The position numbers and the translations under genes were made by a program. Shown one piece after another: positions 3,640 to 45,708 of a DNA stretch of 64,000 bases. This DNA comes from Callorhinchus milii (taxonomy: Eukaryota). The notes under the pieces were generated by a model. It ran no database searches. It saw nothing but the letters and a program-made list of their open reading frames with translations, and had not been told where the DNA came from. The stretch is from the NCBI RefSeq assembly GCF_018977255.1, contig NW_024704744.1, positions 63,116,001 through 63,180,000 of the forward strand, read 5' to 3'. Numbering within the stretch: position 1 is the first letter of the stretch; every line of letters begins with the position of its first letter.

Positions 3640-3994
3640 NNNNNNNNNNNNNNNNNNNNNNNNNNNNNNNNNNNNNNNNNNNNNNNNNNNNNNNNNNNNN
3701 NNNNNNNNNNNNNNNNNNNNNNNNNNNNNNNNNNNNNNNNNNNNNNNNNNNNNNNNNNNNNNNNNNNNNNNNNNNNNNNNNNNNNNNNNNNNNNNNNNNN
3801 NNNNNNNNNNNNNNNNNNNNNNNNNNNNNNNNNNNNNNNNNNNNNNNNNNNNNNNNNNNNNNNNNNNNNNNNNNNNNNNNNNNNNNNNNNNNNNNNNNNN
3901 NNNNNNNNNNNNNNNNNNNNNNNNNNNNNNNNNNNNNNNNNNNNNNNNNNNNNNNNNNNNNNNNNNNNNNNNNNNNNNNNNNNNNNNNNNNNNN
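3640..3994. other. Assembly gap (355 N)
   Basis: Run of n. Confidence 1.
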
Positions 3995-9230: not shown

Positions 9231-9660
9231 CATGCTGGGACTTGTAGGCCGGCCGCCCGAGGCTCGCTTTGCCTCCCAGGCGGGAAGTGACAGCGAACGG
9301 ACTACAGCTCCCGGCGAGCCCCGCGGCCGCTCAGGTGACAGAGGAGCTTGCTGCGCGTGCGCACTGGAGCGCAGGCCCCCACGTCCCGTTATGGGCGAGG
9401 AGGCGGAGGAGGAGTTGATGGGCGGTGTTGCGGCTTCCAACCGCCCAGCGCTGCCGAGCCCCTCAAACACACAGCTGCACAGCTGTGAGAGGAGGCGCCG
9501 TCTCAGAGGGAAATCTGCTGCCCGGAGATCATGACTGGAGAGTTTAAGCGGCGGATGTGAAATGCGGAGTGGCGCCGTTACCATGGCGACCCGACCCGCC
9601 CGCCCGCCCGCCCCGAGCTGTCACTCAGCCTCAGGGGCGGCGCCAACTCCATCGTCAGTC
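9090..9660. promoter_or_regulatory. CpG-island promoter (probably PRKD3) with two ZNF143/THAP11-type motifs, an ETS site and an RFX X-box
   Basis: CpG-rich; CCTACAAGTCCCAGCATGC on minus (9230-9248); GACTACAGCTCCCGGCGAG on plus (9300-9318); GGAAGT 9283-9288; GTTACCATGGCGAC 9577-9590. Confidence 0.7.
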
Positions 9661-9664
9661 AGAC

Positions 9665-11160
9665 ATCCCCCCCAGTCCTCCAACACCAGTCCTCCAACAC
9701 CAGCCCCCCCCCCACACCAGCCCCTCCCCCCCACACCAGCCCCTTCCCCCCACACCAGCCCCCCCACACCAGCCCTCCCCCCACACCAGCCCCTCCCCCA
9801 CCCAGCCCCCCCCCACACCATCCCCCCCCCCACACCAACCCCCCCCACACCAACCCCCCCCACACACACCCCCCCCCCCACACCATCCCCCCCCACACCA
9901 ACCCCCCCCCACACCAACCCCCCCCCACACCAGCCCCCCCCCCACACCAGCCCCCCCACACCAGCCCCCCCACACCAGCCCCTCCCCCCCACACCAGCCC
10001 CTCCCCCACACCAGCCCCCCCCACACCAGCCCCCCCCCACACCAACCCCCCCCACACCAACCCCCCCCACACCAGCCCCCCCACACCAACCCCCCCCACA
10101 CCAGCCCCCCCACACCACCCCCCCCCACACCACCCCCCCCACACCAGCCCCTCCCCCCCACACCCACCCCCCCCCCCACACCAGCCCCCCCCACACCAAC
10201 CCCCCCCCACACCAGCCCCCCCCCCACACCAGCCCCCCCCCACACCAGCCCCCCCCCACACCAGCCCCCCCCCCACACCAGCCCCCCCCCACCACCCCCC
10301 CCCACCAGCCCCCCCCACACACCAGCCCCCCCCCACACCAGCCCCCCCCCACACCAGCCCCCCCCCACACCAGCCCCCCCCACACCAGCCCCCCCCCACA
10401 CCAGCCCCCCCCACACCAGCCCTCTAACACCAGCCCCCCCCCACACTAGCCCTCTAACACCAGCCCCCCCCCACACCAGCCCCCCCCCCACACCAGCCCC
10501 CCCCACACCAGCCCCCCCCCACACCAGCCCCCCCCACACCAGCCCTCTAACAGCAGCCCCCCCCCACACCAGCCCTCCCCCCACACCAGCTCCCCCCACA
10601 CCAGCCCCCCTCCCACACCAGCCCTCCCCCCACACCAGCCCCCAACACCAGGCCCCCAGCCCCCTCTACCCCCAACACCAGCCCCCCAACACCAACACCC
10701 CAGCACCAGTGCCCCAACACCAGCCACCTCCCCCAACACCAGCCCCCAACACCAGGCCCCCAGCCCCCTCTACCCCCAACACCAGCCCCCAACACCAACA
10801 ACCCAGCACCAGTGCCCCACCAGCCACCTCCCCCAACACCAGGCTCCCAGCCCCCTCTACCCCCGGCACCAGCCCCCCAACACCAACAACCCAGCACCAG
10901 TGCCCCACCAGCAACCTCCCCCAACACCAGGCCCCCAGCCCCCTCTACCCCCCGGCACCAGCCCCCCAACACCAACCCCCAGTCCCCTCTACACCCCAGC
11001 AACAACCCCCCAACCCCAAAGCCCCCTCTACCCCCCAGCACCAGCCCCCCAACACCCCAGCCCCCCAACCCCAAACCTCCAGCCGCCTCTACCCCCCAGC
11101 ACCAGCCCCCCAATACCAGCCCCCTCTACTCCCCAGCACCAGCCCCCCAACACCGACCCC
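9665..11160. repeat. C-rich minisatellite, core ACACCAGC(C)n of about 14-16 bp, grading into a longer composite unit
   Basis: Tandem cccccccacaccagc; after about 10640 the units include CCAGGCCCCCAGCCCCCTCTACCCCC. Confidence 0.95.
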
Positions 11161-11334
11161 CTGAGCTTGTCCATTCCCAGTCCGTCCATCCCGAGCCACC
11201 CAACCGCCCCAGCCTACTGCCACCCGGCTACCCAGTCCTCTGACACCCAGCCCGCGCATCCAACAGATTGCTGCGAACTATTCCACTGCAACTGACTGCT
11301 ACTAATTATTATATAATCATTATTATTCCCTCCA

Positions 11335-24100: not shown

Positions 24101-27100
24101 AAAGTGATCCGCCAATTGAATAATAACCGGTTCCTACTTACTGCTAGCGTGTAGAGTAAACAGAGGCATGTAGAGTAATAAAACCCAGGTCTCAAAGCAC
24201 TTCACAGAATATATTGTAAAGTGGATTGACTGTATATTTTGTGGGCAAAACAATTAAAATTGAAAATGAGTAAGAGACAGTGTGGTCATTTTTTGATGAA
24301 TTTGAAACAAAGCAATTGAAGCTTAGTAGGCACAGTAGAGAAAATTTTCAAAGGAACAGAAATCTCATTACAGCAGTATTAATATGATAAAAAAATAAAG
24401 TTGTGACTGGCTGAGCAAGGGTGAACTTTCCCTTTCCTTCCCCTCATACCTATTGCTCCATGCATCTCCAGACCATTACATACAACCAACCAGCAGTGTT
24501 GGAGAGAAATACAAACATACAGAAAGTAGGACCCTCAAAAATGTTTGTAATACTTCTCTAGTAACTAGTTACAGCCCCAGAGGCACAACAGCTATATACC
24601 AAAAGCAAGGATTACCCCACCCTTTTGACCAGTGAGCAATACATGAATCTAAAAGCCGGGGGTTGGGGGGTGGAAATCATTTTTAAAAATACATATTTTC
24701 GAAACCTAAACATAAACCTCTTTGGTCAAACATGTAATTTTAGGTCTATGCCAACAGATGCATATTTTATGTTTAAGAGGGACATCCCCAGAGTGCCTTA
24801 ACAGAAAAATTTATTTCAATGCAAAAAAGGCAGATGTTTTTTCCTAGTTTTCCTACATGAGAGGGAAAAGGATGAAATTATACAGCTCTTGGCCCTAACT
24901 ACAAAGGTATTTCAGGTTCAACCACTCTTGATTGTAAGAACTCTGCCAACTCCATGGCTCATCTTCCTTAGATCTGTCCCAAAATATCTGGCAACATGAA
25001 ATTGCTATAAAGTTGTTAAACCATCAGAAGGCACTCATGGCTGTGGATGATGAAAAACACATTGCTTGATGCTTCTAGCATGCACTTTTAAAGCAATTGT
25101 AAGCAATAACTCAATTTTTGAAGATAAGCAAACTTACAGAATTGTCATCTATAGACTATTTGAATTTTTCTCTTAGATGCAAGGGGGATTTCAGCACCTG
25201 GATGAAGGGCTAAAATCCAGTTCAGCACATTTGCAAACACATCTGTAATCATCTTCTATTTTACAAAACGGGACCTTGTAAATGAAACCCTCTGTTGAAC
25301 TGTTTCTTGGCATCTCACAATGTAACCATAAGACTTTATAAAGCACGATCTGGAAGAACTCTCTTAGTTGGTACATGCTTAAAATGTATGAGTCTGAATT
25401 TTAGTGTCTGATTTTCTGTATCTCATTTGGCAATGATATTAAAGTGATTCTTTGCCCAAACCTCAAATTATTTTCTGAATCCTTAAATTTTTAATGATAC
25501 AATCAAATAAATGAAAAGACAATATATATTTGCCATGTGGACGAAAATGAATCTCTATCCTACTAATTAATTGGACCGACTCTTCATAACTTCTCTCATT
25601 GATTTCAGTCCTTAGGGACTAGAACATTGATGCCTCAATCTTCAAACAGAATTATGGCTGGATGAATGTAACTTTGATAATATTATTGTTCGTTACGTGT
25701 AAAGGCCCATTTTTTTTGAATGTAGGTATAATATCCATTAATCCCCCCCCCATCCCCATCAGCTCTCAACTCATCCTCTTGATTATCTTACTCGGTTGTA
25801 ATCCTGTGTACATTAATCATCCTTGCCTTTGGTTTAGCACCTCTTCTAGTCTTTGAGATGTCTCAAAGTGCTTCACTGTAAAGTGTCGTGACTGTAATTT
25901 GTATGCAAAACATGCCAAATTTGCAAACAGTAATGTTCCACAAACAGCTATCAAGTGAATGACCAATTTAATTTAGAGGGAATTGTAGGCCAGGATATTG
26001 AGGAAACCTCCTTTCTTTTCAAACAGTGCAATGGGATCTTTAACATCAACCTAAACAGAAAGTCTGGACCTCGGTTTAATATTTAGAGGACGGCAAAAGA
26101 GGGCTCCCCAGCATTGTACTGTAGTGTCAACCTAGACTGTGAGTTCAAAGTCCTGATGTGGAGACTGAACCCACATTTCATTTTTGCTGTCTGTTTAGCA
26201 TTTTTTTGAAAAAATGTGTTCATAAATTAATATTTTAATTTTCTATTATTAAAAAACATTTTTTAGAGAAGTTGCCAAACCATATGCTAGAGATGAAGTT
26301 GTTTGCTCGGGCACCTTGCATAAGTGATTCTAGCAGAAGTGATGTAGCAGAAACAGGAAGTACAATGATTTTCCACATTAAACATACACAGAGTAAAATC
26401 ACGTACATCAACAAATATCAATATGCAGTGAGAAAAATACCTGGTAATGTGGCTGAATCACATGCTGCTTCTTTTCTACACATGGTGATGTTACTCTGTA
26501 AAAGCTTCATGGAGTCCGCATTCTTTTCCTCTAATTTGGCTAAAGGAACATCTGATGTTATGCATAGGAAAGTCTTCATTCAAAAGCAAGGACATAATTA
26601 ACACAATAATTATATTTATTTCCCCAGTGCTAGCCAGATTAAAGCAACCAATGCTTAAAGAAAGGTTTTTCAGAAGTTATTTCCATTCATTAGTGAAGTC
26701 AGTGACTAGACGACATAGTAATGAGATAGCCACAAGAACAGTAAAAGGAGTACTTAGGAGGAATTTTTTCATGCAGTTGTTTGGATGCAGAATGCCCTGC
26801 CAAATAGGGTGGTGGAGGCAGAGTCCCCTGTAGCTTTCAAGAGGGAGGTGGACAGGTATATGAAAGGGACTTGAAGGGGTATGAGGATAAGGTGGGACTC
26901 TGGGATTGAATTGATCTCCTTGCTCTGTGAGCCAGTATGGACTTGACAGACCGAATGATCTCCTTTTGCACTGTAGATTTCTGTTTCTACGAGGTGATGC
27001 TCCTCCCCCACCCCACACACAAACTAACTTAAGTGAGAAGGTTGAATATATAATATATAATAATCCTTGCATTTGATATAGCACCTTATCACATCTTCAC

Positions 27101-30100
27101 GACATCTCAAAGCGCTTCACAGAATATACTGTAAAGTGAATTGACTGTATATTTTATGGGCGAAACGCAGCAGCCAATTGCGCACAGCAGTGTCCCACAA
27201 GTAATCGTGGACTAAAGTGACCAAATTATTTTTATTTATTTTGAAGGAATTATTTCCTCCGGAAAAGCAATCCGCCAATCATCTAACTACCGGGTTCCTA
27301 CTTACTGCTAGGTAAACAGAGGCGTGTGGAATAAGGAAACTTTCCAAACGTTTCGCTCTGCCCGGGAATTGAACCAAGGTCTCTTGCTTGCGAGCCAAGT
27401 GCTCTAACCACTAAGCTACAGGACTCCTTTATAGGAGGATCAAATTTGATGGATTATTTTAAGGACATTGTGAATCATCTAGAAATGCACTGTTTAAAAG
27501 AATAGTTTAAGTAGCCCCTTTATATCATTCTCAGTGTCGAATAAAGGGGTTAGGTATCTGAGAGGAAGATTCATAATATTCTGGAGTGGGAGAAGAACCA
27601 CTGCAGAGGGAGATGGAGAATATCATAAAATTTGAAAGCACATTAGTTTAACATGATGCAATACTAGCTTTAATACTTTGAACTTATTTTATATAAGATC
27701 CTTCTAGCCAGCAGAGACTTTCAACTCATTAGTCCTGTATGGAGTCCTGGAGCTCAGTGGTTAGAGCACTCGCAAGCTATAAACCTGGGTTCAATTCCCA
27801 GCAGGGCGAAATGTTGGGCAAGTTTCCTTACTCCACACGCCTGTTTATCTAGCAGTTGTTAATCGATTGGTGGATCGCTTTTCCAGGAGTAATAATTCCT
27901 ACAAAAAAATAATAAATTGTTCATTTCAATCCACGACCGTTTGTGGGACACTGCTGTGTGCAATTGGCTGCCAACACAAAGCATACAATCAAATCACTTT
28001 AAAGTATATTCTGTGAAGTGCTTTGAGATATCTCGAAGATGTGATAAGGAGTTATATCAAATGCAAGGATTATTATTATTTTTAAAGTTCCCCTTGAATT
28101 CCAGAAAGCATTAGGTGCAGGATGGCAAGGAGTTTAAGCAGCTAAAAATGTGTAGCTTGCCATTCAAAAAACACTGGCTGGCAAGCTTCCTGCTGCTTGT
28201 CCAGCTAGGACCACCCTAACCCTGGCTTTCGGGGTTAACAGAAGCTGAGTGGTAAGAATTGCTTCTCCCAGTGACTAGCCTCTCTCTCCAATTCTTGCCG
28301 ACGAACCAGGTTGGTTGGTCTGTCATCAGCAGTGTTCTGGAGTACTGCAGACTCACCTGGCGGTTTGGCTCGATTCCAACATTTCACTGCCAAACACGTC
28401 ACCATGGAGTTAGTCCAAGGGGATCCTGCTTATCTCCTCCTCATATTTAAACTGTTGATTGTAGATTCCTTTTATATCCGCCTCACAATGAAAAATTTAG
28501 ATGCAAGTGGACATATCAGCACTTTATAAGGTGAGGAAGACAATCAACAGGATATTTCCTCACTAACCTGCCCTGTTTCAAGTGACAGATGGGCCTGCTT
28601 GTATTTTACAGTATTATTATACTGCATATCACACATTTTACTGTTTGAATACAACAGCTAGGTGGTTAAAATCTGAGGAAAAAAGGCTATCAACCTCTCT
28701 ACATCATAAGTTTAGCCTCAGTTCATACAGGAGTTATCCTGCAGCTGTTCTTAGGCACACACTGGACATGTAGTGTTAAGACTTTTTTTTTAAATATAGA
28801 TTTTGGATTTGCTCTAAAATCCAATCTTTTAGACATCAAATTATAAATAACATAGATCATGTAAAACGTAGATCTCTGGAGTCAATTAATTATCTCCTGG
28901 ACTCGGTTCAGCGGCAGCATAGAACTGTGCCTTATGAGAATTAATTCAGGTCATGTTAACAATTTGGGATGCTTTATCCAGTTTTATGACCAATGGACCA
29001 TTTATTCGTCAATTGAGCTGTGGTTGAATTCCTGAATTGAAAATTACAACTGGGAACAATCTTACAAAATCTCTTTTGAATGGCCCTTTTAATGCAATGC
29101 AAGTTATTTTTATGATTGTTAATTCAGGGGTAATGAAATAGGATGAATATTTTATCCACATGAAAATCAAAAGACTAAGAAGTATGAATATGTACTTGAT
29201 CGGCTATTTGGGTGATGTACAAGGCCTAAATTTGCAAGATGCAAGAATCTGTTTTTATGTCTCTTATACAAGGGCCAAAAATCTAGATATTTACACTTTA
29301 TTAAAAACTGTATTAGTCAACAACTTGCATTTATATAGCACCCCTCACACAGGGTAGCGTCCCAGAGCGCTTATGGCATAGTCAAACAAGGCATGCTCTT
29401 TAGAAACACATGCTGACCCTCATTGCTGCACTGGACTAGGCTATGCTCAGCCTTCACTATGAGTTCACAATCCCAACATGGATCTTGAATCCAAACCTTC
29501 TGAATCAGTAAAAGTGCTTCCAACTGAGGTAGACTGAAAACTCATGATTCTTTTGTCTTTCTGCATCTTTAGCAATCTCCAGATCATTGGCAAGTCTTGA
29601 TCTCTACTAAAGTCCATATGTTCATTTGGTTTCACTCCTTCCCTTGATCTTTTTATTTATGAATCCGAAGCCAAATAAATTTATTCTGGGGAACAGATTT
29701 TACAGGTTATACAAACGAAGGAGTGTGAAGATGTAAACATTTTGTTATCTAGATGTAAACATTTGGTTCGTCAGTCTTCAGGAGGGTAAGTTGAAAACAT
29801 TACGCTCAATTTATTTCACCCTCACTCGTTTACAAAACTCATTTTTTCCTGAATGCGGGAACCTGTCCTATATTTTCTAGACCTGACCTGTGAAACAGTG
29901 TTGGGTCACGATCCTTATGGGAATTAAAATTACAGATATTAACATTTGACCCAAACGCTCAAGTACAAATGGTTAACAAACTAAAATAAACCAACAAAAA
30001 AGATACAAATAGAATGAGGCAAGCGGCAAATGTCAACTTCTACTTGTGGCCGAACGTCTACCAGGATGTGAGGGACCACTTGATCCAAAAGTTGTTTATA

Positions 30101-33100
30101 TTCCTGAAGTAATGAAAGGAAAAGTAAGTCACTAATAGCCTATTTTCTGCTGAGCATTAGGATACGTTATAAAGATACTGTCTAATACAGACTGTAGGAA
30201 GTAGTAGACTCTAAATATTGGTGTTGCTGAACATTTGCTTTTCTGAACTAACTGCAGGTTAAATCCTTCCTCCAAAGGTTTGTAATCAGTACAACTAGAT
30301 TGGCATTAAATAATTTAGATTTGAAATATCTGTAATGTTGATTATATTAACATTCCAATGACACCATCAAGAAAGCCTGCAGTCAGCTTGATAAAGCTGT
30401 AAACTACTGAAATCATGCAATGGTAGTTTTTATGCCTAACTCTCTTGATAAAGGGAGATCACAATATCATTCTTATCAGGAAAGGCAGCATTTTCTTATG
30501 GAATGTTGGTTATCCTATGTGTTCTCAAGCATTCATTGGAAATGAAGCAAGTGTTACATACTGCAGATAATTTGCATGAAACAACATTCGATAAACAATT
30601 AATTTGAAATGGGGTGGCATATTTGGATGGGGGGATTATAAACGAGGATGATGTGCTATTTCACATTTATTTGAAATAACAATGAATTAAATTACTAACT
30701 ACATTGGAGGAACTATTGTTAAAATAATAACATGCATTTTTATTGCACCCTTTACACAGGGTAACGTCTCAGAGAACTTGTGAAAGATATATGGTATTCT
30801 GGTTTGGAGTTGCTTGGCTCAGTTTCACGAACACCATTCTCCAATACTACACTTGAAGACACTTAGTGAAAGTTAGCACTGTAGCAGACTTCTGATCTGT
30901 TGTTCTAAATGTATTGGGTTTTTTTTCAAAAAAAACTTCATTAAGTAAATTATTTTCTCTACCCATTTCCCCCAAATAGATGTGTGAGGCTGGTGACTCA
31001 TTTCCAAGTCCTTAATCAATACGACTATTGAACAGAGGATGCTTAGGTGATATACCAGACTGGCCTGGAATGATCCACCCTCTAATTCTTCCCACCTTCA
31101 AACTAGCACTTCAGCTTAAGTGAATCTACTACTGTATACAGAAACCTCAGCAAATTTGAGCCTTCATTCTGAGGCAATTCAAATTTATTTAACCATTATA
31201 CTTTTAGAGATAAATATGACTACAATCTGTAATGCACCTACTAAATAAAACTGCAATACATCTTTGTTATGGAAATAAAATTAAACTTACCTCAACAGTT
31301 ACTCTTTGTTCTTTTGGTAGTAATTTAAGTGTCCTGCACTGAAATTCCAAAAGGCAAACAGGAGTTATAAAAAACATTACTAAACACATTATATGAGGCC
31401 TTCAGTTAAATGATGCAGCAATGTTACCATTTCATCGATTATAGTTTCTTCAAATGTCAGAGGTTCAGTCCCAAACTTGCCAGGGAGGGAGGTTGTTAAA
31501 GGTGCAACTGTATTTCGTGTTCTTGTGATAATGATCACATCATATCAAGCTTTCTTGAAAATTGCCTCTCTTCTGTTACATTTTCTGACCATCTTCAGAA
31601 AATGTATTATGTATGATTCCCAGCAGGGCAAAACCTTGGGCAAGATTCCTTACTCCACACGCCTGATAATAATCCCTCAAGAAATAAAAAAAAGCAATAA
31701 AATTGGTCGCTTCAATCCACGACTGTTTGTGGGACATTGCTGTGCGCATTGGCTGCCGCGTTTCGCCCACAAATATAGTCAAATCATTTTACAGTATATT
31801 CTGTGAAGCGTTTTGAGACATAAGAACAGCACTATATCAAATGTAAGGATTATTATTATTATTTTTCTTGGCCTAGTCTATAGTAGGCCAAGAAAGATGG
31901 TCAGAATATGTAACAGGAGAGGAAATTTTCGTGAGAGCTTAATTCTATGTACTATTTCTTCACTTTTCTACTCAGTCTATATTAATGGGAATGGTCCCTG
32001 AATTAAATGTGAGTGAAAACTAAAATGTTTCCATTGAGATTTCCACAAGAAACTATCAATGTTTTTTTATTTGGTCAGCCAGATGCCTGACATAATGCAG
32101 AAACCCATCACCATGCTTAAAAGTATCCAAACCAGATAGTTTGATGCATGTCACCTCCACCATGGACATTTCTATGTCTAGAATGGAATGCTCACTCTCC
32201 ACCCGGAGGGACAAATCCTGTTTACCCAATTCTAGAGAATATTAGGCGCCGATTGGCAAGAGCTAAGGCAACAGGACCCCAGGGTTTGTTGGGGTAGTGC
32301 TGTAGTTTCACCAGCTTGTGTTGTAAGTGTATGTAAAATGGTTCAATGTAGTAAATGGCCGATAAAGTATTGTTTACATGTTGCTCAAAAATACACATTT
32401 ACAGCTGGAGCCATTTAATGCATACTTATTCTCAGTGCACTGACCTTATCAGTTGCTGCTGAACCACAAAATCTCTCGTAGTTAATCAATTCTTTTATTG
32501 TGGGATTGTTACTGCACACTGCACAGGCTGGCTGTTTAGGTCGAAGTTTAATATTGCGGAATCGAGCTTCTAAAGCATCAAACACTAACATCTGTTGGCT
32601 GTAAGATGCTGAAGGATTACAGTGAAGGAACCTTCTGGGAAAACATAGTTCTGCCTCAGGAAACATGTTCAGACACAGGATTATACCCACAATTTAAACA
32701 TATCGTTATTGCTGGGCAATGGTTTCTGTCAAACAAACACGAAGATAAAAATACATAACAAACATGGTCCAAGCATAACTCACTAACATTACCTAGAATA
32801 AAAATGTGGTCTGAAACTACTTTAATTTAAAATGGAATGTCACTTAATAAATATACCATAGAACATTTCTAAATTAGCTTTTTGACCACTGGTAACCGAA
32901 GGGAATTTTCAGTGCTTTTATCAGCTTTCAGCTCGGATGCAATAACGCTGAGACAAATACTGTTGGAACAATAAAAATATTCTAACGTTACAAAAGGCTT
33001 TAATGATTATATTAACCTCATTAATATTAATACTCATTAAGGTTAAACAAACATGAAACACATTGCACTGCTGTTTGTTCTCTCTCCTATTCCCCATCCT

Positions 33101-36100
33101 GCCTTTTCTTGTACTTGGAGTCCTGTAGCTCAGTGGTTAGACCACTCGCTTTGCAAGTGAGAGACCTGAGTTCAATTCCAGGCAGAGGGCGAAACCTTGG
33201 GCAAGTTTCCTTACTCCACACAGAGCCTAATAATAATCCCTCCAAAAACAATAATAAATTGGTCATTTTCAAACTACGACTGTTTGTGGGACATTGCTGT
33301 GCGCAATTGGCTGCCGCGTTCGCCCACAAATATAGTCAATTCACTTTACAGTGTGTTCTGTGAAGTGCTTTGGGACGTCCTCCTGACGTGAAAAGCGCTA
33401 TATCAAATGCAAGGATTATTATTATTATTATTACTTGCACTTTACATTCAAAAATAACTCAATTTCTTTATTTGATGCCTTGTTCTCGTTTACAAAATCG
33501 CCAGGACAATTCAGTTATATTTCTTTCTGTGTTACATCCTATAGTCTATTTTGGAGACAAATGTCACATCCACAAATATGGTTGGCTAAAAATGGTCTGT
33601 AAAGGCCATATTTTCACAATCATTCATGACTATTGACTAATCAGATGGCGCATTTTTAGGTTACCAAGTAGGTGTTTACCAAGACAGAACTGGCTTTCAA
33701 TAGGGTCAGGCAGCTCCAGATCAGCTCCCAGACCAGTGAGAAGCACTCCTTTCCAAAATGAATCAAATCATTCCGGTTGCTCATAGCTCCTTTCCAGCAT
33801 TGTTACTGTCTTGGCCTAATAGAAGAGACTTGAACCGCTAAGGCTCTTCTCATCAGGCTGCCCCTGAAGATTTTTTTTCAATGTTAAATAAGGATGTTAC
33901 CATAGCCTTTTAATAATCTTTGCATTTGATAGAGCACCTTATCACGTTTTCAAGACGTCTCAAAGTGCTTCACAGGATATACTGTGAAGTGAACTGACTA
34001 TATCCTTTGATTGGCGAAACTCGGCAGCCAGTTTGCACACAGCATTGTCCCACAAATAGCCATGGAGTGACCAATTTTATTTGGAGGATTTGCTGGCGAG
34101 GACACCAGAAGAAATGCCTTTCCTTTTCAAATAGTCTTTTCCAATGTACACTAACAGGAATTATTCTCCCTAGGCTGTCCTTCCCCTTTATGGTGATCAA
34201 CCGTTGTAATAATACAAAACTACACAAAACGCTGAGAAGAGCCACATGATGGCAGTGTTCTCCTGAAATAATTCTAGTTGGTACTATGATTGCTATTCTT
34301 AGCACAATTTGCTTTGAGAATGCTAAATCTTGAAAACTGTAAAAGTAACCAGTACTTCATCCTATTTCAGGTGCCAAGTGGGTATTAAGCGTTGATATAG
34401 GCACGATATAAATGTAAAGTTGTATTGTATTGCTTCGAATCCACTGGAAACATCTACAGGAAAATACTTTGTAGTTATCTCAATGTTTCTAAAAGATTTA
34501 ATTAATTGAGGCGTATATCCTGAAAAGAAAATTATGAACACACATATGCAAATGGCAAGGAAATAAAAAGATACATCCTATTCCAGAAGCAATCTTCAGC
34601 ACCTCCAAAGCCTGAATGCATCCCATAATTCCTGGTACTGGAACATATAAAAATATATTAAAATCATTGTTCTTAACACAAACTTGATTGTCTCAAACAC
34701 TATTTACAAATTCTGGACTATGGCTTTTTGACTAAAATAAGCGTACAAGTGATACCCAAAATAAAGGAAGAAATATATGAATCCGTGCACATTCCCAAGT
34801 ATCCAGTTAGAAAATAGCACAGGCTGGGAGCATGTTCTCATTTGTAGTTTCAGTAAGCAAGAAAATGGAACAGTGAGGGAGAACCGGAACCTACAGGACT
34901 GAACAAAATACGCCATAGATATTATAACATGCTTTGTCACTTCTGAATGAGAAGCGATTAAATTAGATTACTTGTACCTGTTGCTGCCATGTTAAATCCT
35001 GATGTGTTTAAAAGGAGCTAGCAAGCCATTGTGCAAGGCTGAGAACAGAATAAATAAACCTACTTCTGACCACAGGAAGCTTTTACAGATTGAGACATTG
35101 CAACGTTTGCATCCTGCTGGTCAAGATTATTTTTACATCTTTAGAATTGCAGCCTATGTTTGTATAATGCAACAACAGCAAAGGAATTAAGTTTGACTCT
35201 TTTTACCATTAGCCTTTTCAATGAACCATCCATCAGCAGGAATAAAAACGTTCATATCATACTTTTATCAAATTGTGTTTTAAGACTTGAATTTCAGATC
35301 AATGACAACTATACAGAATACACATAATGAAAGTCAACAGTAACAACTTGCATTTATGTAGCATTCTTCACATAGGATAGTGTCTTTGAAAAGTTATGGA
35401 ATGAAGACTTACCAACACCCAGTACTCCTCCATCTGCACAGTTAGTTACAGTTTCAGCTGGAGGTGGTTTTGGGTAGAGACATCTATAGCATGGACCACC
35501 ATTGTAATTATATACCGTGAGCTGAAATAGTTAAATCATACACAAATGTATACTTAGCTAATAGACAAATATCCAAAATCTGGAAAAAAAACAGTAGTAC
35601 AGTAAACCCCCAGCTTAGCGTACTCCAGGTATCCGGAATTCATACCTAACCGGACCGAGCCCGAAACAGGAAACATTTTTAAAAAATTCTGGGGCCGCTC
35701 CCACCAGGTCACTTTCCTAGCACGCACCCCTACCTAACCATGATTGCTGGCTTTTGTGGCCAGGGATAATCACTTTGACTCAGTTTGAATGCTGTGGCTC
35801 TACTTTCTGTTCACGGATTTTAAACAATTACAATGCAAAGTGCTTCACACGATATACTGTAAACTAGTTTGACTTAAGTTTTGTTGGCAATACACGACAT
35901 AGCATTTACAAATTATTTCTCTCTCCTTTAATTACTCACCAAAGTATTTGCTGCTAAAAAATAAAATAATACTAATAATTCTTGCATTTTATACAGCGTA
36001 TCTTATTTTATGAACCCAACAAATGTGTTAAAACTGGGCGTGTATTATTTATTTTACTAAATATCTTGAGTTTTATTTTATTTTCATTACCTGTCCTTCA

Positions 36101-39100
36101 AACCTCAGAGCACTAGCTGAAACCAGCGGCTTCCCACTCAGTACACAAGTGTCATTGACAAGAAAACGGGTGGGTACGTTGTCAGAACAATCTACTATAA
36201 TGTCATATATAGAGAAAAAGAGTTAAGAAACATGTTGGCTTTTAACAAAAATATGGATCTACCACACAAAATAATACAGAAAAAGGATACTGTTGAATAA
36301 GCTGAATTGCATTCTTGTAATTCAATTGAAAGTGGTAAGGTATGCATTCAACCTTTGAATTCAACCTGTAGAACAGAAAAGATAGTGTAAAATAAATTAA
36401 AGCTATGACATTTTATAACTTGCTTTTTATCTTCTAATCTTTCAATATTAATAATGCTATCTATGCCTATAACAATAATTGTATAAAGGGTAAAGTGTTG
36501 CTGCACAACTCTCAGTGCCTGGCACTGAACCTTGGAGTAGTTTCACTCATTCAATTCCAGAATTTCTGATTTCAGACGCGAGGTCATTGAAAGTTGATTA
36601 AGCATAGACTTAATACTTTCCCACATGATCAGGTAAGACACAACAGTCTTTCAAATGTTGTGAAGAACATGTTATGTTCACAGCAGCAAAGACCTGGGAG
36701 CAAGTTTGCCCTCACAGCCAAGACACAATCTTGAGATTGGAAAACAAAAGAGAAGTTGGAAACTGAAAATTAAAGAATGCAGTAGATTAGTACATTGTAC
36801 TTCAATTTCTAGGGCATGGAATTGAATGCAGCGTAAACCTTCCACTTCCAATGACAACCTGAGCAATTCTAGTGTACCAGTTACACAAGCAGCCCTCTGG
36901 CCAGCAGGCATTTTCTAGGGTTTTAAATTTGTCCCATAATTTGAAGCACTGGCTTCCATTAAAATTAACAACTTTCAGGGTCTGGCATTGCACCTTGGAG
37001 TAGTTTCACTCATTCAATTCCAGAATTTGAATAAATCACATCATCACAGGAGTTCAGAACCAAATAGAAATCCCAAATTGCTGGTCAACATGTGGGAAAA
37101 AATTACACAACTAGAAGAAACATAAAAAGGTACAAAATTCCGTACTTTTTCTTTATTGAAAAGGAATTGGAGTACAATATTGACCTTTACAATAATAATC
37201 TTTGCATTTGATATAGCAACTTATCACATTATTTAGACGTCTCAAAAAGCTTCAAAGGATGTATTGCATTCTGAGATGCGATCTATGTGAAGAGCGCTAT
37301 CTAAACACAAGTAGTTGTTGATGTTATTGTACTATAGAGTGATTGTGTGCATTTTGTGGGTAAACATAATAATAATCCATGCATTTGATATAGCGCCTTA
37401 TCACGTCGTTCAGACATCTCAAAGCGTTTCATAGAATATACTGCAGTGAATTTTACATGGTATTAAAATAATGTGTTTTTCTTTCTTACTTTCTTTTTCT
37501 CTTTCTTAACATGGCAACCAATATACGCACAGTAATGTCCCACAGACACCCATGGTGACCATTTGATTTGGGGGGATTGTTGGTCAGGACACCGGGGAAA
37601 ATTCTATTCTCTTTTCAAATGATGCCATGAGGTATTTAACATTCATCTTGACAGGCAACTAGACCTCTGTTTAATGTCTCTTTCAAAGGACACACACTCG
37701 GCACAGCACTGCAGTGCCATTTAGGTTCCAAGTCACAAGGTGCAACTTGAAAACACAGAAGCAACAGTGCTACCAAGTGAACCAGGCTGACCCAAACAAT
37801 ACAATATAATTTACATTATATGGTGCCACGTTGGGAGGACGCCTCAAAGCGCTTTAAACTGTTGGCTGCGTACCCAAGCTGGAGTTGGGAGACAAAGGAG
37901 GTGGGAGGGTAAAGGTGACTGAATGCACAGTCAAAGAGGGATTTCTTGACTTTTGTATAGAAGACATTCCTCCAAGACTTTTAATCTCCTTTAAAGGACA
38001 GTGTGATATTGAACAATTTTGTCATTACAGAACCAAGCTGGGGAGGATTCTTAATAATGGTTTCCCACTTCACAGTTGTATTTGCAGTCCTGTAGCCTTG
38101 TGGTTTGAGCACTCGCTTCGCAAGCGAGAGACCTGGGTTTGATTCCCAGCAGGGCGAAACCTTGGGCAAGTTTCCTTACTCCACACGCCTGATAATAGTC
38201 CCTCAAGAAAAAAATAAATATAATAAATTGGTCACTTCAATCCACGACCGTTTGTGGGACACTGCTGTGCGCAATCGGCTGCCGCGTTTCACCCACAAAT
38301 ATACAGTCAATTCACTTTACAGTATATTCTATGAAGCGCTTTGAGAATTCTTGAAGACATGAATAGCACTATATCAACTGCAAGGATTATTATTATTATA
38401 TTATTGTTATTTATGTGCCTGAGTGAAACTAACTTTTCCACTGAGTAGGAGAATATCATTAATTAAATGTTGCTTTTCCAGTATCAGTACATCTCACTAA
38501 TCAAGGCACCCTTTTAGATTGTTTTTCTCCTGTAATATTGACTGTACACAAGTTTCACTAAAGCAGGCAATTCTGCAGTCATGGTTCTAGGATGAGAGGG
38601 GCTGGCACGCCGGGGAGAGATAAAGGATGGCATACTTACCGATTTATTGTGACTGCTGCAGATAATGCTTTCTGCACACCCACTCTATCTTCTCCATGGA
38701 GGACCTGCCTCTGTAGGTTACTAAGCTCAACTTCATCCCAATCAAGTAAGCCCAATCGACCTGCAATGATATTGACACATTGAAACACATTACCAAAAAA
38801 TGTACTGCATACATTTCCCACATACCTTCATAGTTCACTTTATGTCAACATGCTGCTCTACAAGTTTTGGATGTAGCAGACCCAATAGTAGAAAAGATAC
38901 TTAATATTTTGCCAATTAAAACTAGATCAGAGGCACAAGAATGTAAATCTAGAAAAGATATAAATGCAGGATGTCTCAATGCCAAATTCCAAAATGTACT
39001 GAAGAAGGTTACTGCAAGATGTTGTTAGGTTGAAACATTCTTGGACTTCTTGGATATGAATTCAAACCCAATCTAGTTATTCGTACAAAATGTCCAGAAC

Positions 39101-42100: not shown

Positions 42101-45100
42101 TATCTGGGGGATTGTTGGCTTGGACACCGGGAGAGCCTCCCTAATTGATATAGTAGACCTCAATAAAAATATACCGGCTTCCTTGAATAATGGGATGGGT
42201 AAATGCCGACTTCTCAAGTAGAATAGGAGATTAAACCTGCTATTTTTTTTATTTATTAGCTTTTTATTGGCTACTTGCAGTGTAGCTCCGGGACGCTAAC
42301 CCACACGAAGGGTGCTATATAAATCCAAGTTATTCTTCTTATTTTGAAAAAGGGAAGCAGATAGTACTGCCAATCCATATTATACCTTAAATCAGCACAC
42401 TGTCAAGACACCACTCCTAATATTCTCCAAAATTAGGTAAACAGGAATCAGCCCTCCAGGTAAGGGTCCGCATTCCATTCAACAACACCAACTTGTACTT
42501 ATATAGCGCCTCCACGCAGGGTAGAGTCTCAGAGACAATCCTGGCAAAAAGCACGGTTTGGCAGCTTTTCTCAAGGGAATGCAGCCTAATTACTGATCTC
42601 AACTGGTTCTGTAGAGAAATTCAAGGTCAAGTAAAACATATCAAACTCTTGTATCCATTGTTGGAGCCTGAGAAGCTCTGGGCGTAGTGAGAGCACTCTC
42701 AGCTCGGAGTCACTTGTGGGTTCAAGCCCCATGTCAGGATTTTGATCTCACACAGTGAGATCTCTCAAATGATCTCTCAAGTGCGGTGCTGGAAGTCATC
42801 GTGACTTGTACTGTATTTTGTGTATTTATATACAGTGTGCATATATGTATTGACTCCCGATATATGCATCCATATGACATCTTACATGTAGAATGTGCAT
42901 TTCTGTGTGTAATAATGTGATTGTATGTGTGTATACAGTGTGTAGTAATGTAAATATATATTGCATGTGTGTATACTGTGTAGTTATGTAAATGTACACG
43001 GTGTATGTATATATTTTGTGTAGTAATGTAAAGCGATATTGTGTGTGTATACTGTGTACTAATGTAAATGTATATTGTGTATATACTATGTGTAATAATG
43101 TAAATGTACATTGTACGTATATTGTGCATTGATATGAAGGTGTATACATAATGTGTCTAACTGTATACACAGTATGTACTAATGTAAATGGGAATTGTGT
43201 GTGTATATACTGTGTGCAGTAATGTAAATGTGTATATATACTCTGTAACTGTATATACTGTGTGTAAACATGTACATATACTGTGTGCAAACTCTCTGCT
43301 TGTCAGCCTCCCCAACTCCTCCCTCCATAGGCTGCCGATCATCCAGAACTCTGCAACCGGTGTCCATTCCCACACTAGGCTCTGTGACCCTATCACCCGC
43401 CATACTCACCCAACTCCACTGGTTCCCATCACACCGAGGATACAGTTCAAGATCCTGGTCTTCACCTTCAAAGCCCTCCATGGCCTCACTCCGCCCTACC
43501 TCTGCCACCAGCTAACCCCTACAAAACCTGTCCGCTGCCTCCGCTCAGCAGGCTCCGCATTGCTTCATGTCCCCCAGCTCGCCTGCCATTGGTGATGCAG
43601 AGTTGTATATACACTGTGTGTAGTGATGGAGAGGTGTATACACACCGTGTCTAGTGATGGAGGTGTATACACACCGTGTGTAGTGATGGAGAGGTGTATA
43701 CACTGTGTGTCGTGATGGAGAGGGGTATACACTGTGTGTAGTGATGGAGAGGTATATACACTGTGTGTAGTGATGGAGAGGGGTATACACTGTGTGTAGT
43801 GATGGAGAGGGGTATACACTGTATGTAGTGATGGAGAGGGGTATATGCACTGTGTGTAGTGATGGAGAGGGGTATACGCTGTGTGTAGTGATGGAGAGGG
43901 GTATATGCACTGTGTGTAGTGATGGAGAGGGGTATACACTGTGTGTAGTGATGGAGAGGTATATACACTGTGTGTAGTGATGGAGAGGGGTATATACTGT
44001 GTGTAGTGATGGAGAGAGGTATATGCACTGTGTGTAGTGATGGAGAGGGGTATATGCACTGTGTGTAGTGATGGAGAGGGGTATATACTGTGTGTAGTGA
44101 TGGAGAGGGGTATATACTGTGTGTAGTGATGGAGAGGGGTATACACTGTGTGTAGTGATGGAGAGGGGTATACACTGTGTGTAGTGATGGAGAGGGGTAT
44201 ATACTGTGTGTAGTGATGGAGAGAGGTATATGCACTGTGTGTAGTGATGGAGAGGGGTATATGCACTGTGTGTAGTGATGGAGAGGGGTATATACTGTGT
44301 GTAGTGATGGAGAGGGGTATACACTGTGTGTAGTGATGGAGAGGGGTATACACTGTGTGTAGTGATGGAGAGGGGTATACACTGTGTGTAGTGATGGAGA
44401 GGGGTATACACTGTGTGTAGTGATGGAGAGGGGTATATACTGTGTGTAGTGATGGAGAGGGGTATACACTGTGTGTAGTGATGGAGAGGGGTATACACTG
44501 TGTGTAGTGATGGAGAGGGGTATACGCTGTGTGTAGTGATGGAGAGGGGTATACGTTGTGTGTAGTGATGGAGAGAGGTATATACACTGTGTGTAGTGAT
44601 GGAGAGGTGTATACACTGTGTGTAGTGATGGAGAGGGGTATACACTGTGTGTAGTGATGGAGAGAGGTATATACACTGTGTGTAGTGATGGAGAGGGGTA
44701 TACACTGTGTGTAGTGATGGAGAGGGGTATACACTGTGTGTAGTGATGGAGAGGGGTATACACTGTGTGTAGTGATGGAGAGGGGTATACACTGTGTGTA
44801 GTGATGGAGAGGGGTATATACACTGTGTGTAGTGATGGAGAGGGGTATACACTGTGTGTAGTGATGGAGAGGGGTATACACTGTGTGTAGTGATGGAGAG
44901 GGGTATACACTGTGTGTAGTGATGGAGAGGGGTATACACTGTGTGTAGTGATGGAGAGGGGTATACACTGTGTGTAGTGATGGAGAGGGTATATACACTG
45001 TGTGTAGTGATGGAGAGGGGTATACACTGTGTGTAGTGATGGAGAGGGGTATACACTGTGTGTAGTGATGGAGAGGGGTATACACTGTGTGTAGTGATGG

Positions 45101-45708
45101 AGAGGGGTATACGCTGTGTGTAGTGATGGAGAGGGGTATACACTGTGTGTAGTGATGGAGAGGGGTATACACTGTGTGTAGTGATGGAGAGGTATATACA
45201 CTGTGTGTAGTGATGGAGAGGGGTATACACTGTGTGTAGTGATGGAGAGGGGTATACGTTGTGTGTAGTGATGGAGAGAGGTATATATACTGTGTGTAGT
45301 GATGGAGAGGGGTATACACTGTGTGTAGTGATGGAGAGGGGTATACACTGTGTGTAGTGATGGAGAGGGGTATACGCTGTGTGTAGTGATGGAGAGGGGT
45401 ATACACTGTGTGTAGTGATGGAGAGGGGTATACACTGTGTGTAGTGATGGAGAGGGTATACACTGTGTGTAGTGATGGAGAGGGGTATATACTGTGTGTA
45501 GTGATGGAGAGGGGTATACACTGTGTGTAGTGATGGAGAGAGGTATATACACTGTGTGTAGTGATGGAGAGGGGTATATGTGGGGGGCGGGGCCCGGTAC
45601 CTGCTGCAGCTGCTCCATCGCGGCTCTGAGCCCCGCCACCTCCGCCTCCTTGTCGCGCAGCTCCTGCCGCAGCCTTGCCATCTCCCTCTGACTCTCCGCC
45701 GCCTCCAT
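20965..45708 (-). CDS. MOCS3: Adenylyltransferase and sulfurtransferase MOCS3/UBA4, complete 13-exon gene, 471 aa
   Basis: Exons of 108,151,93,121,75,118,109,63,164,48,97,111,158 nt join in frame (1416 nt). MoeB/ThiF motifs [37 protein letters not shown]; rhodanese DVRP, CKQGND; C-terminal FPQY-stop. Confidence 0.96.
21251..21641. mobile_element. Non-autonomous Tc1/mariner-pogo (Tigger-like) MITE in MOCS3 intron 12
   Basis: TA|CAGTAGAAC...GTTTCTACTG|TA terminal inverted repeats with TA duplication; sub-terminal GAGGTGAC...GATTACTGA motifs. Confidence 0.75.
23895..24250 (-). mobile_element. SINE (long subfamily), rearranged
   Basis: Tail 23895-24040, body to about 24190, second tail piece to 24250. 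Confidence 0.8.
25815..26175 (-). mobile_element. Deu-like SINE
   Basis: CAAACAGTGCAATGGGATCTTTAACATC...CCTCGGTTTAA core plus tail. Confidence 0.65.
26441..26551 (-). CDS. MOCS3: MOCS3 exon 12
   Basis: [37 protein letters not shown]; phases 1/1 fit both neighbours. Confidence 0.85.
26735..26990 (+). mobile_element. CR1 3'-end remnant
   Basis: AGGAATTTTTTCATGCAG...AGGGTGGTGGAGGCAGAGTC...GACAGACCGAATGATCTCCT. Confidence 0.65.
27058..27427 (-). mobile_element. Full-length tRNA-derived SINE (long subfamily)
   Basis: Same head and tail plus an extra CTGTTTACCTAGCAGTAAGTAGGAACC segment. Confidence 0.92.
27741..28080 (+). mobile_element. Full-length tRNA-derived SINE (long subfamily, diverged)
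   Basis: GGAGTCCTGGAGCTCAGTGGTTAGAG head, ATCAAATGCAAGGATTATT tail. Confidence 0.9.
30007..30103 (-). CDS. MOCS3: MOCS3 exon 11 (start of rhodanese domain)
   Basis: [32 protein letters not shown], donor GTATCTTTTT. Confidence 0.93.
31291..31338 (-). CDS. MOCS3: MOCS3 exon 10
   Basis: [24 protein letters not shown]. Confidence 0.9.
31615..31863 (+). mobile_element. 5'-truncated SINE
   Basis: GATTCCCAGCAGGGCAAAACCTTGGGCAAG body through (ATT)n tail. Confidence 0.85.
32445..32608 (-). CDS. MOCS3: MOCS3 exon 9
   Basis: [55 protein letters not shown], donor GTCAGT. Confidence 0.94.
33117..33433 (+). mobile_element. Full-length SINE (short subfamily) with probable 9-bp target-site duplication
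   Basis: Flanked by CTTGTACTT (33108-33116) and CTTGCACTT (33434-33442). Confidence 0.93.
33912..34140 (-). mobile_element. SINE 3' fragment
   Basis: TTGCATTTGATAGAGCACCTTATCAC...TGTCCCACAAA. Confidence 0.7.
34575..34637 (-). CDS. MOCS3: MOCS3 exon 8
   Basis: [21 protein letters not shown], donor GTATCTTTT. Confidence 0.93.
35413..35521 (-). CDS. MOCS3: MOCS3 exon 7
   Basis: [44 protein letters not shown]. Confidence 0.96.
36091..36208 (-). CDS. MOCS3: MOCS3 exon 6
   Basis: [39 protein letters not shown], donor GTAATG; preceded by TTCTTAAC branch site and AT rather than AG. Confidence 0.9.
36291..36365 (-). CDS. MOCS3: MOCS3 exon 5
   Basis: [25 protein letters not shown], ends at U12-type donor GTATCCTTTT. 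Confidence 0.9.
37190..37790 (-). mobile_element. Cluster of SINE tails and a Deu-like SINE
   Basis: Tails at about 37195 and 37370; GGACACCGGGGAAAA...GCCATGAGGTATTTAACAT core. Confidence 0.65.
38086..38400 (+). mobile_element. Full-length SINE, CGC-anticodon head, short body
   Basis: CTCGCTTCGCAAGCGAG anticodon arm; shared body and tail. Confidence 0.9.
38640..38760 (-). CDS. MOCS3: MOCS3 exon 4
   Basis: [48 protein letters not shown]. Confidence 0.96.
39195..39960 (-). mobile_element. L2 LINE 3' fragment in MOCS3 intron 3
   Basis: DLGVLFD...[12 protein letters not shown]...KLQ.IQNS. Confidence 0.85.
39988..40080 (-). CDS. MOCS3: MOCS3 exon 3 (nucleotide-binding loop)
   Basis: [38 protein letters not shown] boundaries. 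Confidence 0.96.
40575..40860 (-). mobile_element. L2 LINE 3'-end remnant
   Basis: Tail CATTTACACAGCACC...TCGAAGCGTT followed by purine-rich L2-like sequence. Confidence 0.55.
40917..41067 (-). CDS. MOCS3: MOCS3 exon 2
   Basis: ttttcag|KSCCTF...[22 protein letters not shown]|GTACT. Confidence 0.92.
41910..42140 (-). mobile_element. SINE 3' fragment
   Basis: GTCTCAAAGCGCTTCACA...ACAAACAGCCATG...GGACACCGGGAGA. Confidence 0.6.
42810..43288. repeat. Degenerate AT-rich tandem repeat related to the 29-bp unit
   Basis: Recurrent TATACTGTGTGTAGTAATGTAAATG-like units. Confidence 0.75.
43289..43595 (+). mobile_element. L2 LINE internal fragment between the two tandem arrays
   Basis: [13 protein letters not shown]...[22 protein letters not shown]; closely similar to 63145-63445. 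Confidence 0.9.
43605..45580. repeat. 29-bp minisatellite (TACACTGTGTGTAGTGATGGAGAGGGGTA), roughly 65-70 copies, in MOCS3 intron 1
   Basis: Direct periodicity of 29 nt with 28-31 nt variants. Confidence 0.98.

What the first reader, a model, noticed from the sequence alone, without database searches (positions are those of the whole stretch)
36209..36290. 82-nt minor-spliceosome intron with non-canonical GT-AT termini
Seen (minus strand): exon 5 ends CAA CA|GTATCCTTTT, a perfect U12 donor. The 3' end reads TTTCTTAAC-TCTTTTTCTCTAT|A TAT GAC ATT, a U12 branch site 13 nt from the junction with no AG. Splicing after AT gives ...[13 protein letters not shown], the conserved MoeB segment. The next two AGs (in ATTATAGTAG) both shift the frame, and retention (82 nt) does too. 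GT-AT is a rare U12 terminal pair, and automated annotation would likely mis-model this junction.
Basis: partly seen in the sequence, partly recalled or inferred. Interest (0 to 1): 0.82.

Follow-up and report, generated by a model that had tools for sequence, protein, structure and literature searches.

The report
Verified GT-AT minor intron in MOCS3
An 82-base intron in this fish-like MOCS3 gene really is removed at unusual GT...AT ends, carries the signals of the rare minor splicing machinery and seems shared with bony fishes, so it is a well-supported example of a known rarity, not a new kind of thing.

Summary
On the minus strand, exon 5 of a MOCS3/Uba4-type gene ends CAACA, followed by GTATCCTTT (36290-36282). 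TTTCTTAAC lies 13 nt before an AT intron end (36210-36209).

Transcript-like contigs from two studies (X5, X7) skip exactly 36209-36290, with no ambiguity. A DNA contig from a third study (X11) carries the same intron letters. An assembly error and a different junction are therefore excluded as the main form.

The best reading is a U12-type (minor spliceosome) intron of the documented rare GT-AT subtype.

New here: the 3' AT is not private to this genome. In 13 of 13 relatives' sequences that read in from the intron side, the codon before YD is ATG or ATA. These are 10 ORF fragments from assembled contigs with teleost-identical exon 6 and 3 named fish models. Nineteen of 120 listed fish MOCS3 protein clusters read QQYP through the donor, as xTATCC predicts. 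In all, 26 of 120 are mis-modelled at this junction.

U12 dependence is inferred from motifs.

The scan had not noted this intron on other DNA. Earlier notes cover two other introns of this gene and one U12 intron elsewhere in the genome.

The parts
36209..36290 (-). 82-nt intron 5 of the MOCS3-like gene, GT...AT termini, U12-type by motifs
   Evidence: Sequence. Joint 36208->36291 in contigs of X5 and X7, both = 0. Intron letters unchanged in the X11 DNA contig.
36282..36290 (-). 5' splice site GTATCCTTT (9 of 9 to the recalled U12 consensus RTATCCTTT)
   Evidence: the only minus-strand match in the window, lying exactly at the exon 5 end.
36222..36230 (-). Branch-site box TTTCTTAAC (TTCTTAAC is 7 of 8 to the recalled TCCTTAAC); its two A's lie 14 and 15 nt from the last intron base
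   Evidence: No AG or AC between it and the junction.
36209..36210 (-). Non-canonical 3' terminal dinucleotide AT
   Evidence: X11 DNA contig without a difference here. Relatives have ATG or ATA at the same codon.
36291..36365 (-). Exon 5 (75 nt): (R)[24 protein letters not shown](Q), ends with CA of a split Gln codon
   Evidence: X5 contig piece 36291-36366 (the last letter is ambiguous with exon 4's last G).
36091..36208 (-). Exon 6 (118 nt): A + [39 protein letters not shown]
   Evidence: ThiF profile 111-149, E 1.7e-12. Uba4 6yub residues 124-162, E 2.8e-10. Contig pieces 36091-36208 in X5, X6 and X7.
35413..35521 (-). Exon 7
   Evidence: Joints 35521->36091 (X5, X6, X7) and 34637->35413 (X5, X7), both GT-AG on the minus strand. 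ThiF profile 149-185 at 26.1 bits, below Pfam's 28.1 cut-off.
34575..34637 (-). Exon 8
   Evidence: Contig pieces in X5 and X7.
32609..34574 (-). Intron 8: a second U12-like intron of the same gene (GT-AG; donor GTATCTTTT; TTCCTTCAC 13 nt before the AG)
Evidence: Sequence. Joint 32608->34575 in X5 and X7.
32445..32608 (-). Exon 9
   Evidence: Contig pieces in X5, X6 and X7. 862 library proteins at E <= 0.001.
38640..38760 (-). Exon 4 (inferred from sequence only)
   Evidence: ThiF profile 45-84.

Best explanation
Intron 5 (36290..36209, minus strand) of a multi-exon MOCS3/Uba4-type gene is a U12-type (minor spliceosome) intron of the rare GT-AT subtype. Proposed mechanism: the U11/U12 di-snRNP recognises the GTATCCTTT 5' splice site and the TTTCTTAAC branch box together. 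The 3' cut falls a fixed short distance (13 nt) downstream of the branch box. The minor spliceosome tolerates a terminal T when the intron starts with G, so cleavage falls after AT and not at the AGs 14 and 17 nt further on. Shown: the letters, the use of exactly this junction in mature transcript contigs, and the AT in independent DNA. Inferred: that the minor spliceosome does the cutting (from motifs and literature), and that the AT end and the TATCC donor are ancestral to this organism and teleosts (from protein-level read-throughs).
For: Letters. Donor 9 of 9 to the consensus, lying at the exon end. Branch box 13 nt from the 3' end with no AG or AC between. As a U2 donor, ACA|GTATCC is poor: it lacks G at -1 and at +5 (my reading against the recalled consensus). 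Junction: joint 36208->36291, ends AT..AC on the + strand, both = 0. It lies in X5's 1997-nt contig, which also skips introns 6, 7 and 8 precisely, and in X7's 200-nt contig. X5, X6 and X7 have zero depth in unique intronic bins, while X11 has about 8-20 in most non-repeat bins, so the first three behave as transcriptomes. DNA: the X11 contig 35365-36558 has no listed difference in the intron. Frame: ThiF profile positions 84 | 26 positions | 111. Conservation: 10 of 10 ORF fragments from assembled contigs that extend upstream of a teleost-identical exon 6 have M or I before YD. Three of 3 named fish models that read in from the intron do too (P0216 Astyanax, P0233 Pampus, P0195 Triplophysa). 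None has R, T or K, as AG, AC or AA would give. Nineteen of 120 listed fish MOCS3 clusters read QQYP through the donor (= CAR|TAYCC). Three models (P0212, P0219, P0266) join LIQ-H-GKPLVS. That is what a GT at this same donor position, joined to an AG inside exon 6, would give. Literature, passages seen: 'A 5'G can splice to 3'G or T nucleotide (GT-AG or GT-AT)' (PMC4176328). GT-AT is listed among human G-type minor introns (PMC8280824). GT-AT is among conserved non-canonical minor termini in animals (10.1101/2022.09.24.509304). The U11/U12 di-snRNP recognises the 5'ss and BPS cooperatively, without a polypyrimidine tract or U2AF (PMC6558932).
Against: There is no functional test of U12 dependence, and no formal classifier (intronIC) was available. 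The branch box differs from the recalled consensus at one position. The transcript evidence is assembled contigs from runs only guessed to be RNA. They show presence, not proportion, so a minor isoform using another junction, or intron retention, cannot be excluded, and 139 further joints were not shown. X6's contig stops 6 letters past 36208 and says nothing. Relatives were compared only through translated read-throughs. Gln is CAA or CAG, so G versus A at intron position +1 is not resolved there; those introns could be AT-AT. Ten further fragments begin at the M and are biased by start-codon choice. The fragments carry no organism names. Their assignment to teleosts rests on exon 6 being identical to that of named teleost proteins. 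The window's own organism is coded, so the depth of the conservation is not established.
Confidence: 0.9

Rival explanations
1. The AT is an assembly or sequencing error; the true intron ends AG or AC.
For: A single-base error at 36209 would turn AG into AT. The window has a masked or gap run elsewhere.
Against: A Logan contig of run X11 (1194 nt, 7 differences from the window, so another haplotype or individual) shows no difference in 36209-36290. Relatives have AT at the same place in 13 of 13 unbiased cases.
Confidence: 0.01
2. The intron is removed by the major (U2) spliceosome using non-canonical sites.
For: The 13 nt before the 3' end are pyrimidine-rich (TCTTTTTCTCTAT). U2-type introns with odd termini exist (PMC4176328, abstract and passages).
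Against: The donor lacks -1G and +5G but matches the U12 consensus 9 of 9. A U12-type branch box sits at the U12-typical distance. There is no AG for U2AF. TATCC is kept in 19 of 19 donor read-throughs in fish models.
Confidence: 0.04
3. The real or co-dominant mRNA uses a canonical in-frame pair, GT at 36267 with AG at 36195 or 36192, and the GT-AT form is a minor by-product.
For: Such pairs exist and keep the frame open without stops. Several public fish models use analogous solutions (QQYP...CSDN).
Against: It would replace the conserved YDIIV that aligns residue for residue with ThiF and Uba4. The only joints shown across this region in X5 and X7 are 36208->36291, including the near-full-length contig of depth 65.8. 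Ninety-four of 120 fish clusters have QQ|YD.
Confidence: 0.04
4. The junction is a cDNA or assembly artefact (template switching at a repeat).
For: Non-canonical junctions in contigs can arise that way.
Against: There is no shared letter at the two sides (both = 0). The same joint appears in two studies on two alleles (36314 C in X5, A in X7). It restores the conserved protein exactly.
Confidence: 0.01

Closest known systems
GT-AT ('G-type', GT-AN) U12-type introns described in human and other animals (PMC4176328 discussion passage; PMC8280824 passages; 10.1101/2022.09.24.509304 section 3.6 passages)
   Same: GT start, AT end, U12 5' splice site and branch box, and rarity. The tolerance of a 3' T after a 5' G is stated in the PMC4176328 passage.
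   Different: This instance is in MOCS3. My two literature searches did not connect MOCS3 with minor introns. Human MOCS3 is, from recall, a single-exon gene, so human-centred catalogues would lack it. Catalogues held in supplements (IAOD, MIDB, U12DB) could not be opened and may already list the fish gene.
Conserved non-canonical junctions such as the GT-GG intron of BANP (PMC4176328, section 18 passage)
   Same: A non-canonical 3' dinucleotide kept over large evolutionary distances.
   Different: BANP is GT-GG in most vertebrates but GT-AG in fishes. Here the fishes themselves carry the non-canonical AT, and no AG state was seen in any relative examined.
AT-AT and AT-AA minor introns ('A-type'; PMC8280824; 10.1101/2022.09.24.509304)
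   Same: U12 introns with a variable last base. The teleost orthologues could formally be AT-AT, since +1 is not resolved at protein level.
   Different: The window's intron begins with G. Three fish models are best explained by a GT donor at this position.

Membership tests
U12-type (minor spliceosome) intron | 5' splice site /[GA]TATCCTT at intron positions +1 to +8 | tested here: met
   GTATCCTTT at 36290-36282, directly after the exon end used in transcripts. The consensus itself is recalled and agrees with the review passages.
U12-type (minor spliceosome) intron | Branch-site box TCCTTAAC-like, close to the 3' end (about 10-20 nt) | tested here: met
   TTCTTAAC (7 of 8) at 36229-36222, 13 nt before the last intron base. 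The distance range is recalled.
U12-type (minor spliceosome) intron | The intron is actually excised at the predicted boundaries | tested here: met
   Joint 36208->36291, both = 0, in contigs of X5 and X7.
U12-type (minor spliceosome) intron | Excision depends on U11, U12, U4atac and U6atac snRNPs | not testable with these tools
   Needs knock-down, mutant or in vitro splicing.
U12-type (minor spliceosome) intron | Position and type conserved in orthologues | tested here: inconclusive
   Protein level only. Donor read-throughs give QQYP in 19 of 19 models. The 3' codon is ATG or ATA in 13 of 13 sequences. L-N, L-D or F-L-T codons compatible with CTTAAC, CTTGAC or TTCTTAAC lie 12-15 nt upstream (my reading). 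No orthologous DNA could be fetched.
U12-type (minor spliceosome) intron | Score above threshold in a trained classifier (intronIC or similar) | not tested
   Not installed in the sandbox.
GT-AT subtype of minor introns | First two bases GT and last two bases AT in genomic DNA, not only in one assembly | tested here: met
   Window and the X11 DNA contig with no difference.
MOCS3 / Uba4 (adenylyltransferase and sulfurtransferase) | N-terminal ThiF/MoeB adenylation domain followed by a C-terminal rhodanese domain | tested here: met
   ThiF PF00899 above Pfam's cut-off on exons 3, 4 and 6. Exon 7 has 26.1 bits against a cut-off of 28.1. Rhodanese PF00581 on exon 10 has E 8.7e-4 and 20.1 bits against a cut-off of 22.2, as expected for a piece. 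Uba4 6yub E 2.8e-10. Exon 9 matches P0040, a protein its source names 'Molybdenum cofactor synthesis 3'.

The most novel reading that the evidence does not exclude
The terminal T has been held since the common ancestor of this organism and teleosts. On this reading it is held by selection, not by neutral tolerance: a deliberately weak minor-intron 3' end would make intron 5 a slow, retention-prone step that sets MOCS3 output (tRNA thiolation and molybdenum cofactor supply). The gene's second, and perhaps third, U12-like intron would compound this. The in-frame retained form annotated in Astyanax (P0216) would be one visible product.
Probability: 0.1. Interest if true: 0.55.

Novelty: new member of a known kind. 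Interest (0 to 1): 0.3.

Why it matters
This is a clean natural example of a minor intron that ends in AT after a GT start. It has transcript support and appears to be kept across distant fishes. Three uses follow. (1) It is a ready test case for how the minor spliceosome picks a 3' end by distance and not by AG. (2) It explains a recurrent annotation error: about one in five listed fish MOCS3 protein clusters lose or garble the conserved YDIV(A)DCSDN segment of the adenylation domain (26 of 120). (3) Together with a second confirmed U12-like intron in the same gene, it marks fish MOCS3 as a multi-minor-intron gene. From recall, mammals have replaced this gene with an intronless copy. None of this changes what is known about the kinds of introns that exist.

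Tried and rejected

2. One metagenome scan with the fish-like fragment P0278. It returned 80 loci, the best at 85% identity. I translated six of them (L001-L005, L011). All six read straight through the site as continuous MoeB/MOCS3-like ORFs, so none is a vertebrate locus with this intron. This led nowhere.

3. The listing of cluster members on 10 fragments gave no names and no accessions. The fragments' origin was instead inferred from exon 6 being identical to that of named teleost proteins.

4. PDB and Pfam searches with exon 5 alone (24 aa) found nothing. The exon is too short and too variable.

5. Assembly error, U2-type splicing, a canonical alternative junction and a cDNA artefact were considered and rejected (see rivals).

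6. The third homologue search (exon 5 ORF) was not spent. It could not resolve G versus A at +1 and would have carried no names.

7. Literature: 'MOCS3'+'U12' gave 2 papers, both irrelevant by title and abstract. 'mocs3'+'minor intron' gave 0 papers. Supplements are closed, so minor-intron catalogues were not seen.

Exons were handled one by one. Frame tests were done by length arithmetic and by translating each side separately.

9. Organism identity was not pursued, because the tools code it. Exon 6 differs at five positions from a stretch that is near-invariant in the listed teleosts. So the window's organism is probably not one of that teleost group.
Full report
WHAT IS THERE. The minus strand of the window carries a multi-exon gene. 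Translated one by one, its exons hit the ThiF/MoeB adenylation domain. Exons 3, 4 and 6 pass Pfam's cut-off; exon 7 scores 26.1 bits against 28.1. Further downstream exon 10 gives a rhodanese hit of 20.1 bits against 22.2. The best solved relative of exon 6 is Uba4 (6yub, E 2.8e-10, residues 124-162). Exon 9 finds P0040, a protein that its source names 'Molybdenum cofactor synthesis 3'. So the host gene is a MOCS3/Uba4 orthologue of about 12 exons spread over roughly 25 kb (45708 to about 20968).

THE OBSERVATION. One search shows ...CAACA|GTATCCTTTTTCTG...CATGTTTCTTAACTCTTTTTCTCTAT|ATATGACATT... on the minus strand.
- The intron is 36290..36209, 82 nt long, and runs GT...AT.
- The donor nonamer is at 36282-36290.
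- The branch box TTCTTAAC is at 36222-36229, 13 nt from the end.
- No AG or AC lies between the box and the junction.
- The Pfam profile fixes the frame. Exon 4 ends at ThiF position 84 and exon 6 begins at 111 with its first residue. Exon 5's 24 whole and two split codons fill the 26 positions between.
- Each motif alone is no more frequent in the window than in shuffles (2 against 1.48; 4 against 5.31). Their joint placement at the two ends of one intron has, by my arithmetic from those numbers, a probability of about 6e-9.

TRANSCRIPTS AND DNA. One run search listed 14 runs of a coded 'organism A' from four studies. I laid four of these 14 (X5, X6, X7, X11) on window:32400-36700.
- X5, X6 and X7 have no depth in unique intronic bins, and their contigs skip the introns, so they behave as transcriptomes. 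X11 has about 8-20 in most non-repeat bins, so it is DNA.
- The joint 36208->36291 ('skips 82, ends AT..AC' on the + strand, both = 0) is present in X5. It lies in a 1997-nt contig of depth 65.8 that also skips introns 6, 7 and 8 at GT-AG ends.
- The same joint is present in X7, in a 200-nt contig with 52 and 118 letters on its two sides.
- X5 and X7 belong to different studies and carry different alleles at 36314.
- X6's contig ends 6 letters beyond 36208 and is uninformative.
- The X11 DNA contig (35365-36558; 7 differences from the window) shows no listed difference inside the intron.
- Caveats: these are contigs and not reads. Proportions, retention and rare isoforms are not measured, the 'RNA' label is the tool's guess, and 139 further joints were not displayed.

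ALTERNATIVE JUNCTIONS. One search enumerated 77 canonical pairs (GT-AG, GC-AG, AT-AC) around the site, of which 23 keep the length class.
- With the 36290 donor, the only in-frame AG (36239) brings in a stop.
- However, GT at 36267 paired with AG at 36195 or 36192 is in frame and free of stops. It would replace the conserved YDIIV with intron-derived residues.
- That pair is not among the displayed joints. It is exactly the kind of solution seen in wrong public models of relatives (see below).

RELATIVES. I therefore used translated read-throughs.

(a) 3' side. A search with the stop-to-stop ORF around exon 6 gave 24 proteins among 25 candidates. I aligned 21 of the 24, dropping the three weakest, which are bacterial-type JGI entries. 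One search added five cluster members.
- Exon 6 of most fragments is letter for letter the sequence found in named teleost MOCS3 proteins.
- In the spliced protein, the residue before Y is Gln from a split codon CA|R. The genomic codon at that place is therefore the last two intron bases plus R.
- All 10 fragments (8 clusters) that extend upstream show M (5) or I (5), that is AT+G or AT+A.
- Ten further fragments start at that M. They are biased by start-codon choice and are not counted.
- None shows R, T or K.
- Three named models that read in from the intron agree: P0216 (Astyanax mexicanus isoform X2, M), P0233 (Pampus argenteus, I) and P0195 (Triplophysa rosa, M).
- Four fragments, and the L001 locus, read straight through with sense residues. 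They have no intron at this site.

(b) 5' side. I classified the 120 fish MOCS3 clusters listed (of 5631 at E <= 1e-20); searches give the result.
- 94 have the spliced QQ|YD form (F/E/N variants allowed).
- 19 read QQYP through the donor, as CAR|TAYCC predicts. Two of these retain the whole intron in frame.
- 3 join LIQ-H-GKPLVS. This is best explained by a GT at this same donor position joined to an AG inside exon 6.
- 1 has an acceptor-side extension.
- 1 lacks exon 6 (Amia).
- 2 are garbled around exon 5.
- In total, 26 of 120 are mis-modelled here.

(c) Branch site. In the read-throughs, the codons 12-15 nt upstream of the AT end are L-N, L-D or F-L-T. These are compatible with CTTAAC, CTTGAC or TTCTTAAC. 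This is my inference from degenerate codons, not a demonstration.

The limit of all three lines is the same. G versus A at +1 is not resolved by Gln codons, the fragments are nameless, and the window's organism is coded.

MECHANISM. Review passages (PMC6558932) state three things. The U11/U12 di-snRNP recognises the minor 5' splice site and branch sequence cooperatively. Minor introns lack a polypyrimidine tract and do not need U2AF. Urp/ZRSR2 contacts the 3' site. A passage of PMC4176328 states that in U12-dependent splicing 'a 5'G can splice to 3'G or T (GT-AG or GT-AT)', with G preferred. The anatomy here fits this picture: a perfect donor, a near-consensus branch box, a 3' cut 13 nt downstream, and AGs only 14 and 17 nt further on. 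That 3' site choice goes by distance from the branch is from my recall of the Padgett laboratory's work, not from a paper opened here. The use of the junction is shown. The identity of the machinery is inferred.

KNOWN OR NEW. GT-AT is a documented rare class.
- It is listed among human G-type minor introns (PMC8280824 passage).
- It is listed among conserved non-canonical minor termini in animals (10.1101/2022.09.24.509304, section 3.6 passages).
- Long-conserved non-canonical ends are also known, for example BANP GT-GG (PMC4176328 passage).
- Searches for MOCS3 with U12 (2 papers, irrelevant by title and abstract) and mocs3 with 'minor intron' (0 papers) found no description of this intron.
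- Catalogues in closed supplements may hold it.

The verdict is a new, well-supported member of a known kind. Its modest added value is the apparent conservation of the AT end and the documented annotation failures. The earlier notes of this scan concern two other introns of the same gene and one U12 intron elsewhere in this genome, not this intron on other DNA.

Noticed in passing
window 32609-34574 (minus): Second U12-like intron of the same gene (GT-AG): donor T|GTATCTTTT and TTCCTTCAC 13 nt before the AG. The junction 32608->34575 is confirmed in contigs of X5 and X7. A fish fragment (P0295) reads ...GKVCILF through the same donor, compatible with GTATCCTTT.
   Followed up: partly
window 26552-30006 (minus): Intron after exon 10 also starts GTATCTTTT, but has only a poor branch-box candidate (GCATAAC, 5 nt before the AG). 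It was outside the stretch laid with reads, so its type is undecided.
   Followed up: no
window 43608-45578: A 29-bp minisatellite of 67 copies with 94% matches fills the start of intron 1, directly after exon 1. It gives spurious 600-740-aa ORFs in all three minus-strand frames.
   Followed up: partly
window 36314: Polymorphism C/A on the + strand in exon 5 (AAG Lys to AAT Asn on the coding strand). X5 has C; X7 and X11 have A.
   Followed up: partly
window 33120-33400, 33840-34130, 35280-35420, 35860-36000 and eight tRNA-like hits (16262, 27358, 27743, 33123, 38086, 47666, 60070, 62129): Very high summed contig depth in all four runs, and eight Rfam tRNA matches of 29-50 bits. These are most likely copies of tRNA-derived SINEs scattered through the introns.
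   Followed up: no
window 9557-11164 (+): A 535-aa open frame of proline-rich short repeats (PPHTSPPPHQ...) lies in a region of 0.57-0.62 GC and strong negative GC skew. It may be a low-complexity repeat or a repetitive coding exon; this was not examined.
   Followed up: no
public fish MOCS3 models P0040, P0151, P0154, P0155, P0162, P0172, P0174-P0176, P0181, P0190, P0192, P0195, P0203, P0212, P0216, P0219, P0223, P0228, P0231-P0233, P0243, P0254, P0258, P0266: Twenty-six of the 120 listed fish MOCS3 protein clusters are mis-modelled at the orthologous junction, by read-through, partial exon loss or exon skipping.
   Followed up: yes
window 3640-3994: Run of 355 N.
   Followed up: no
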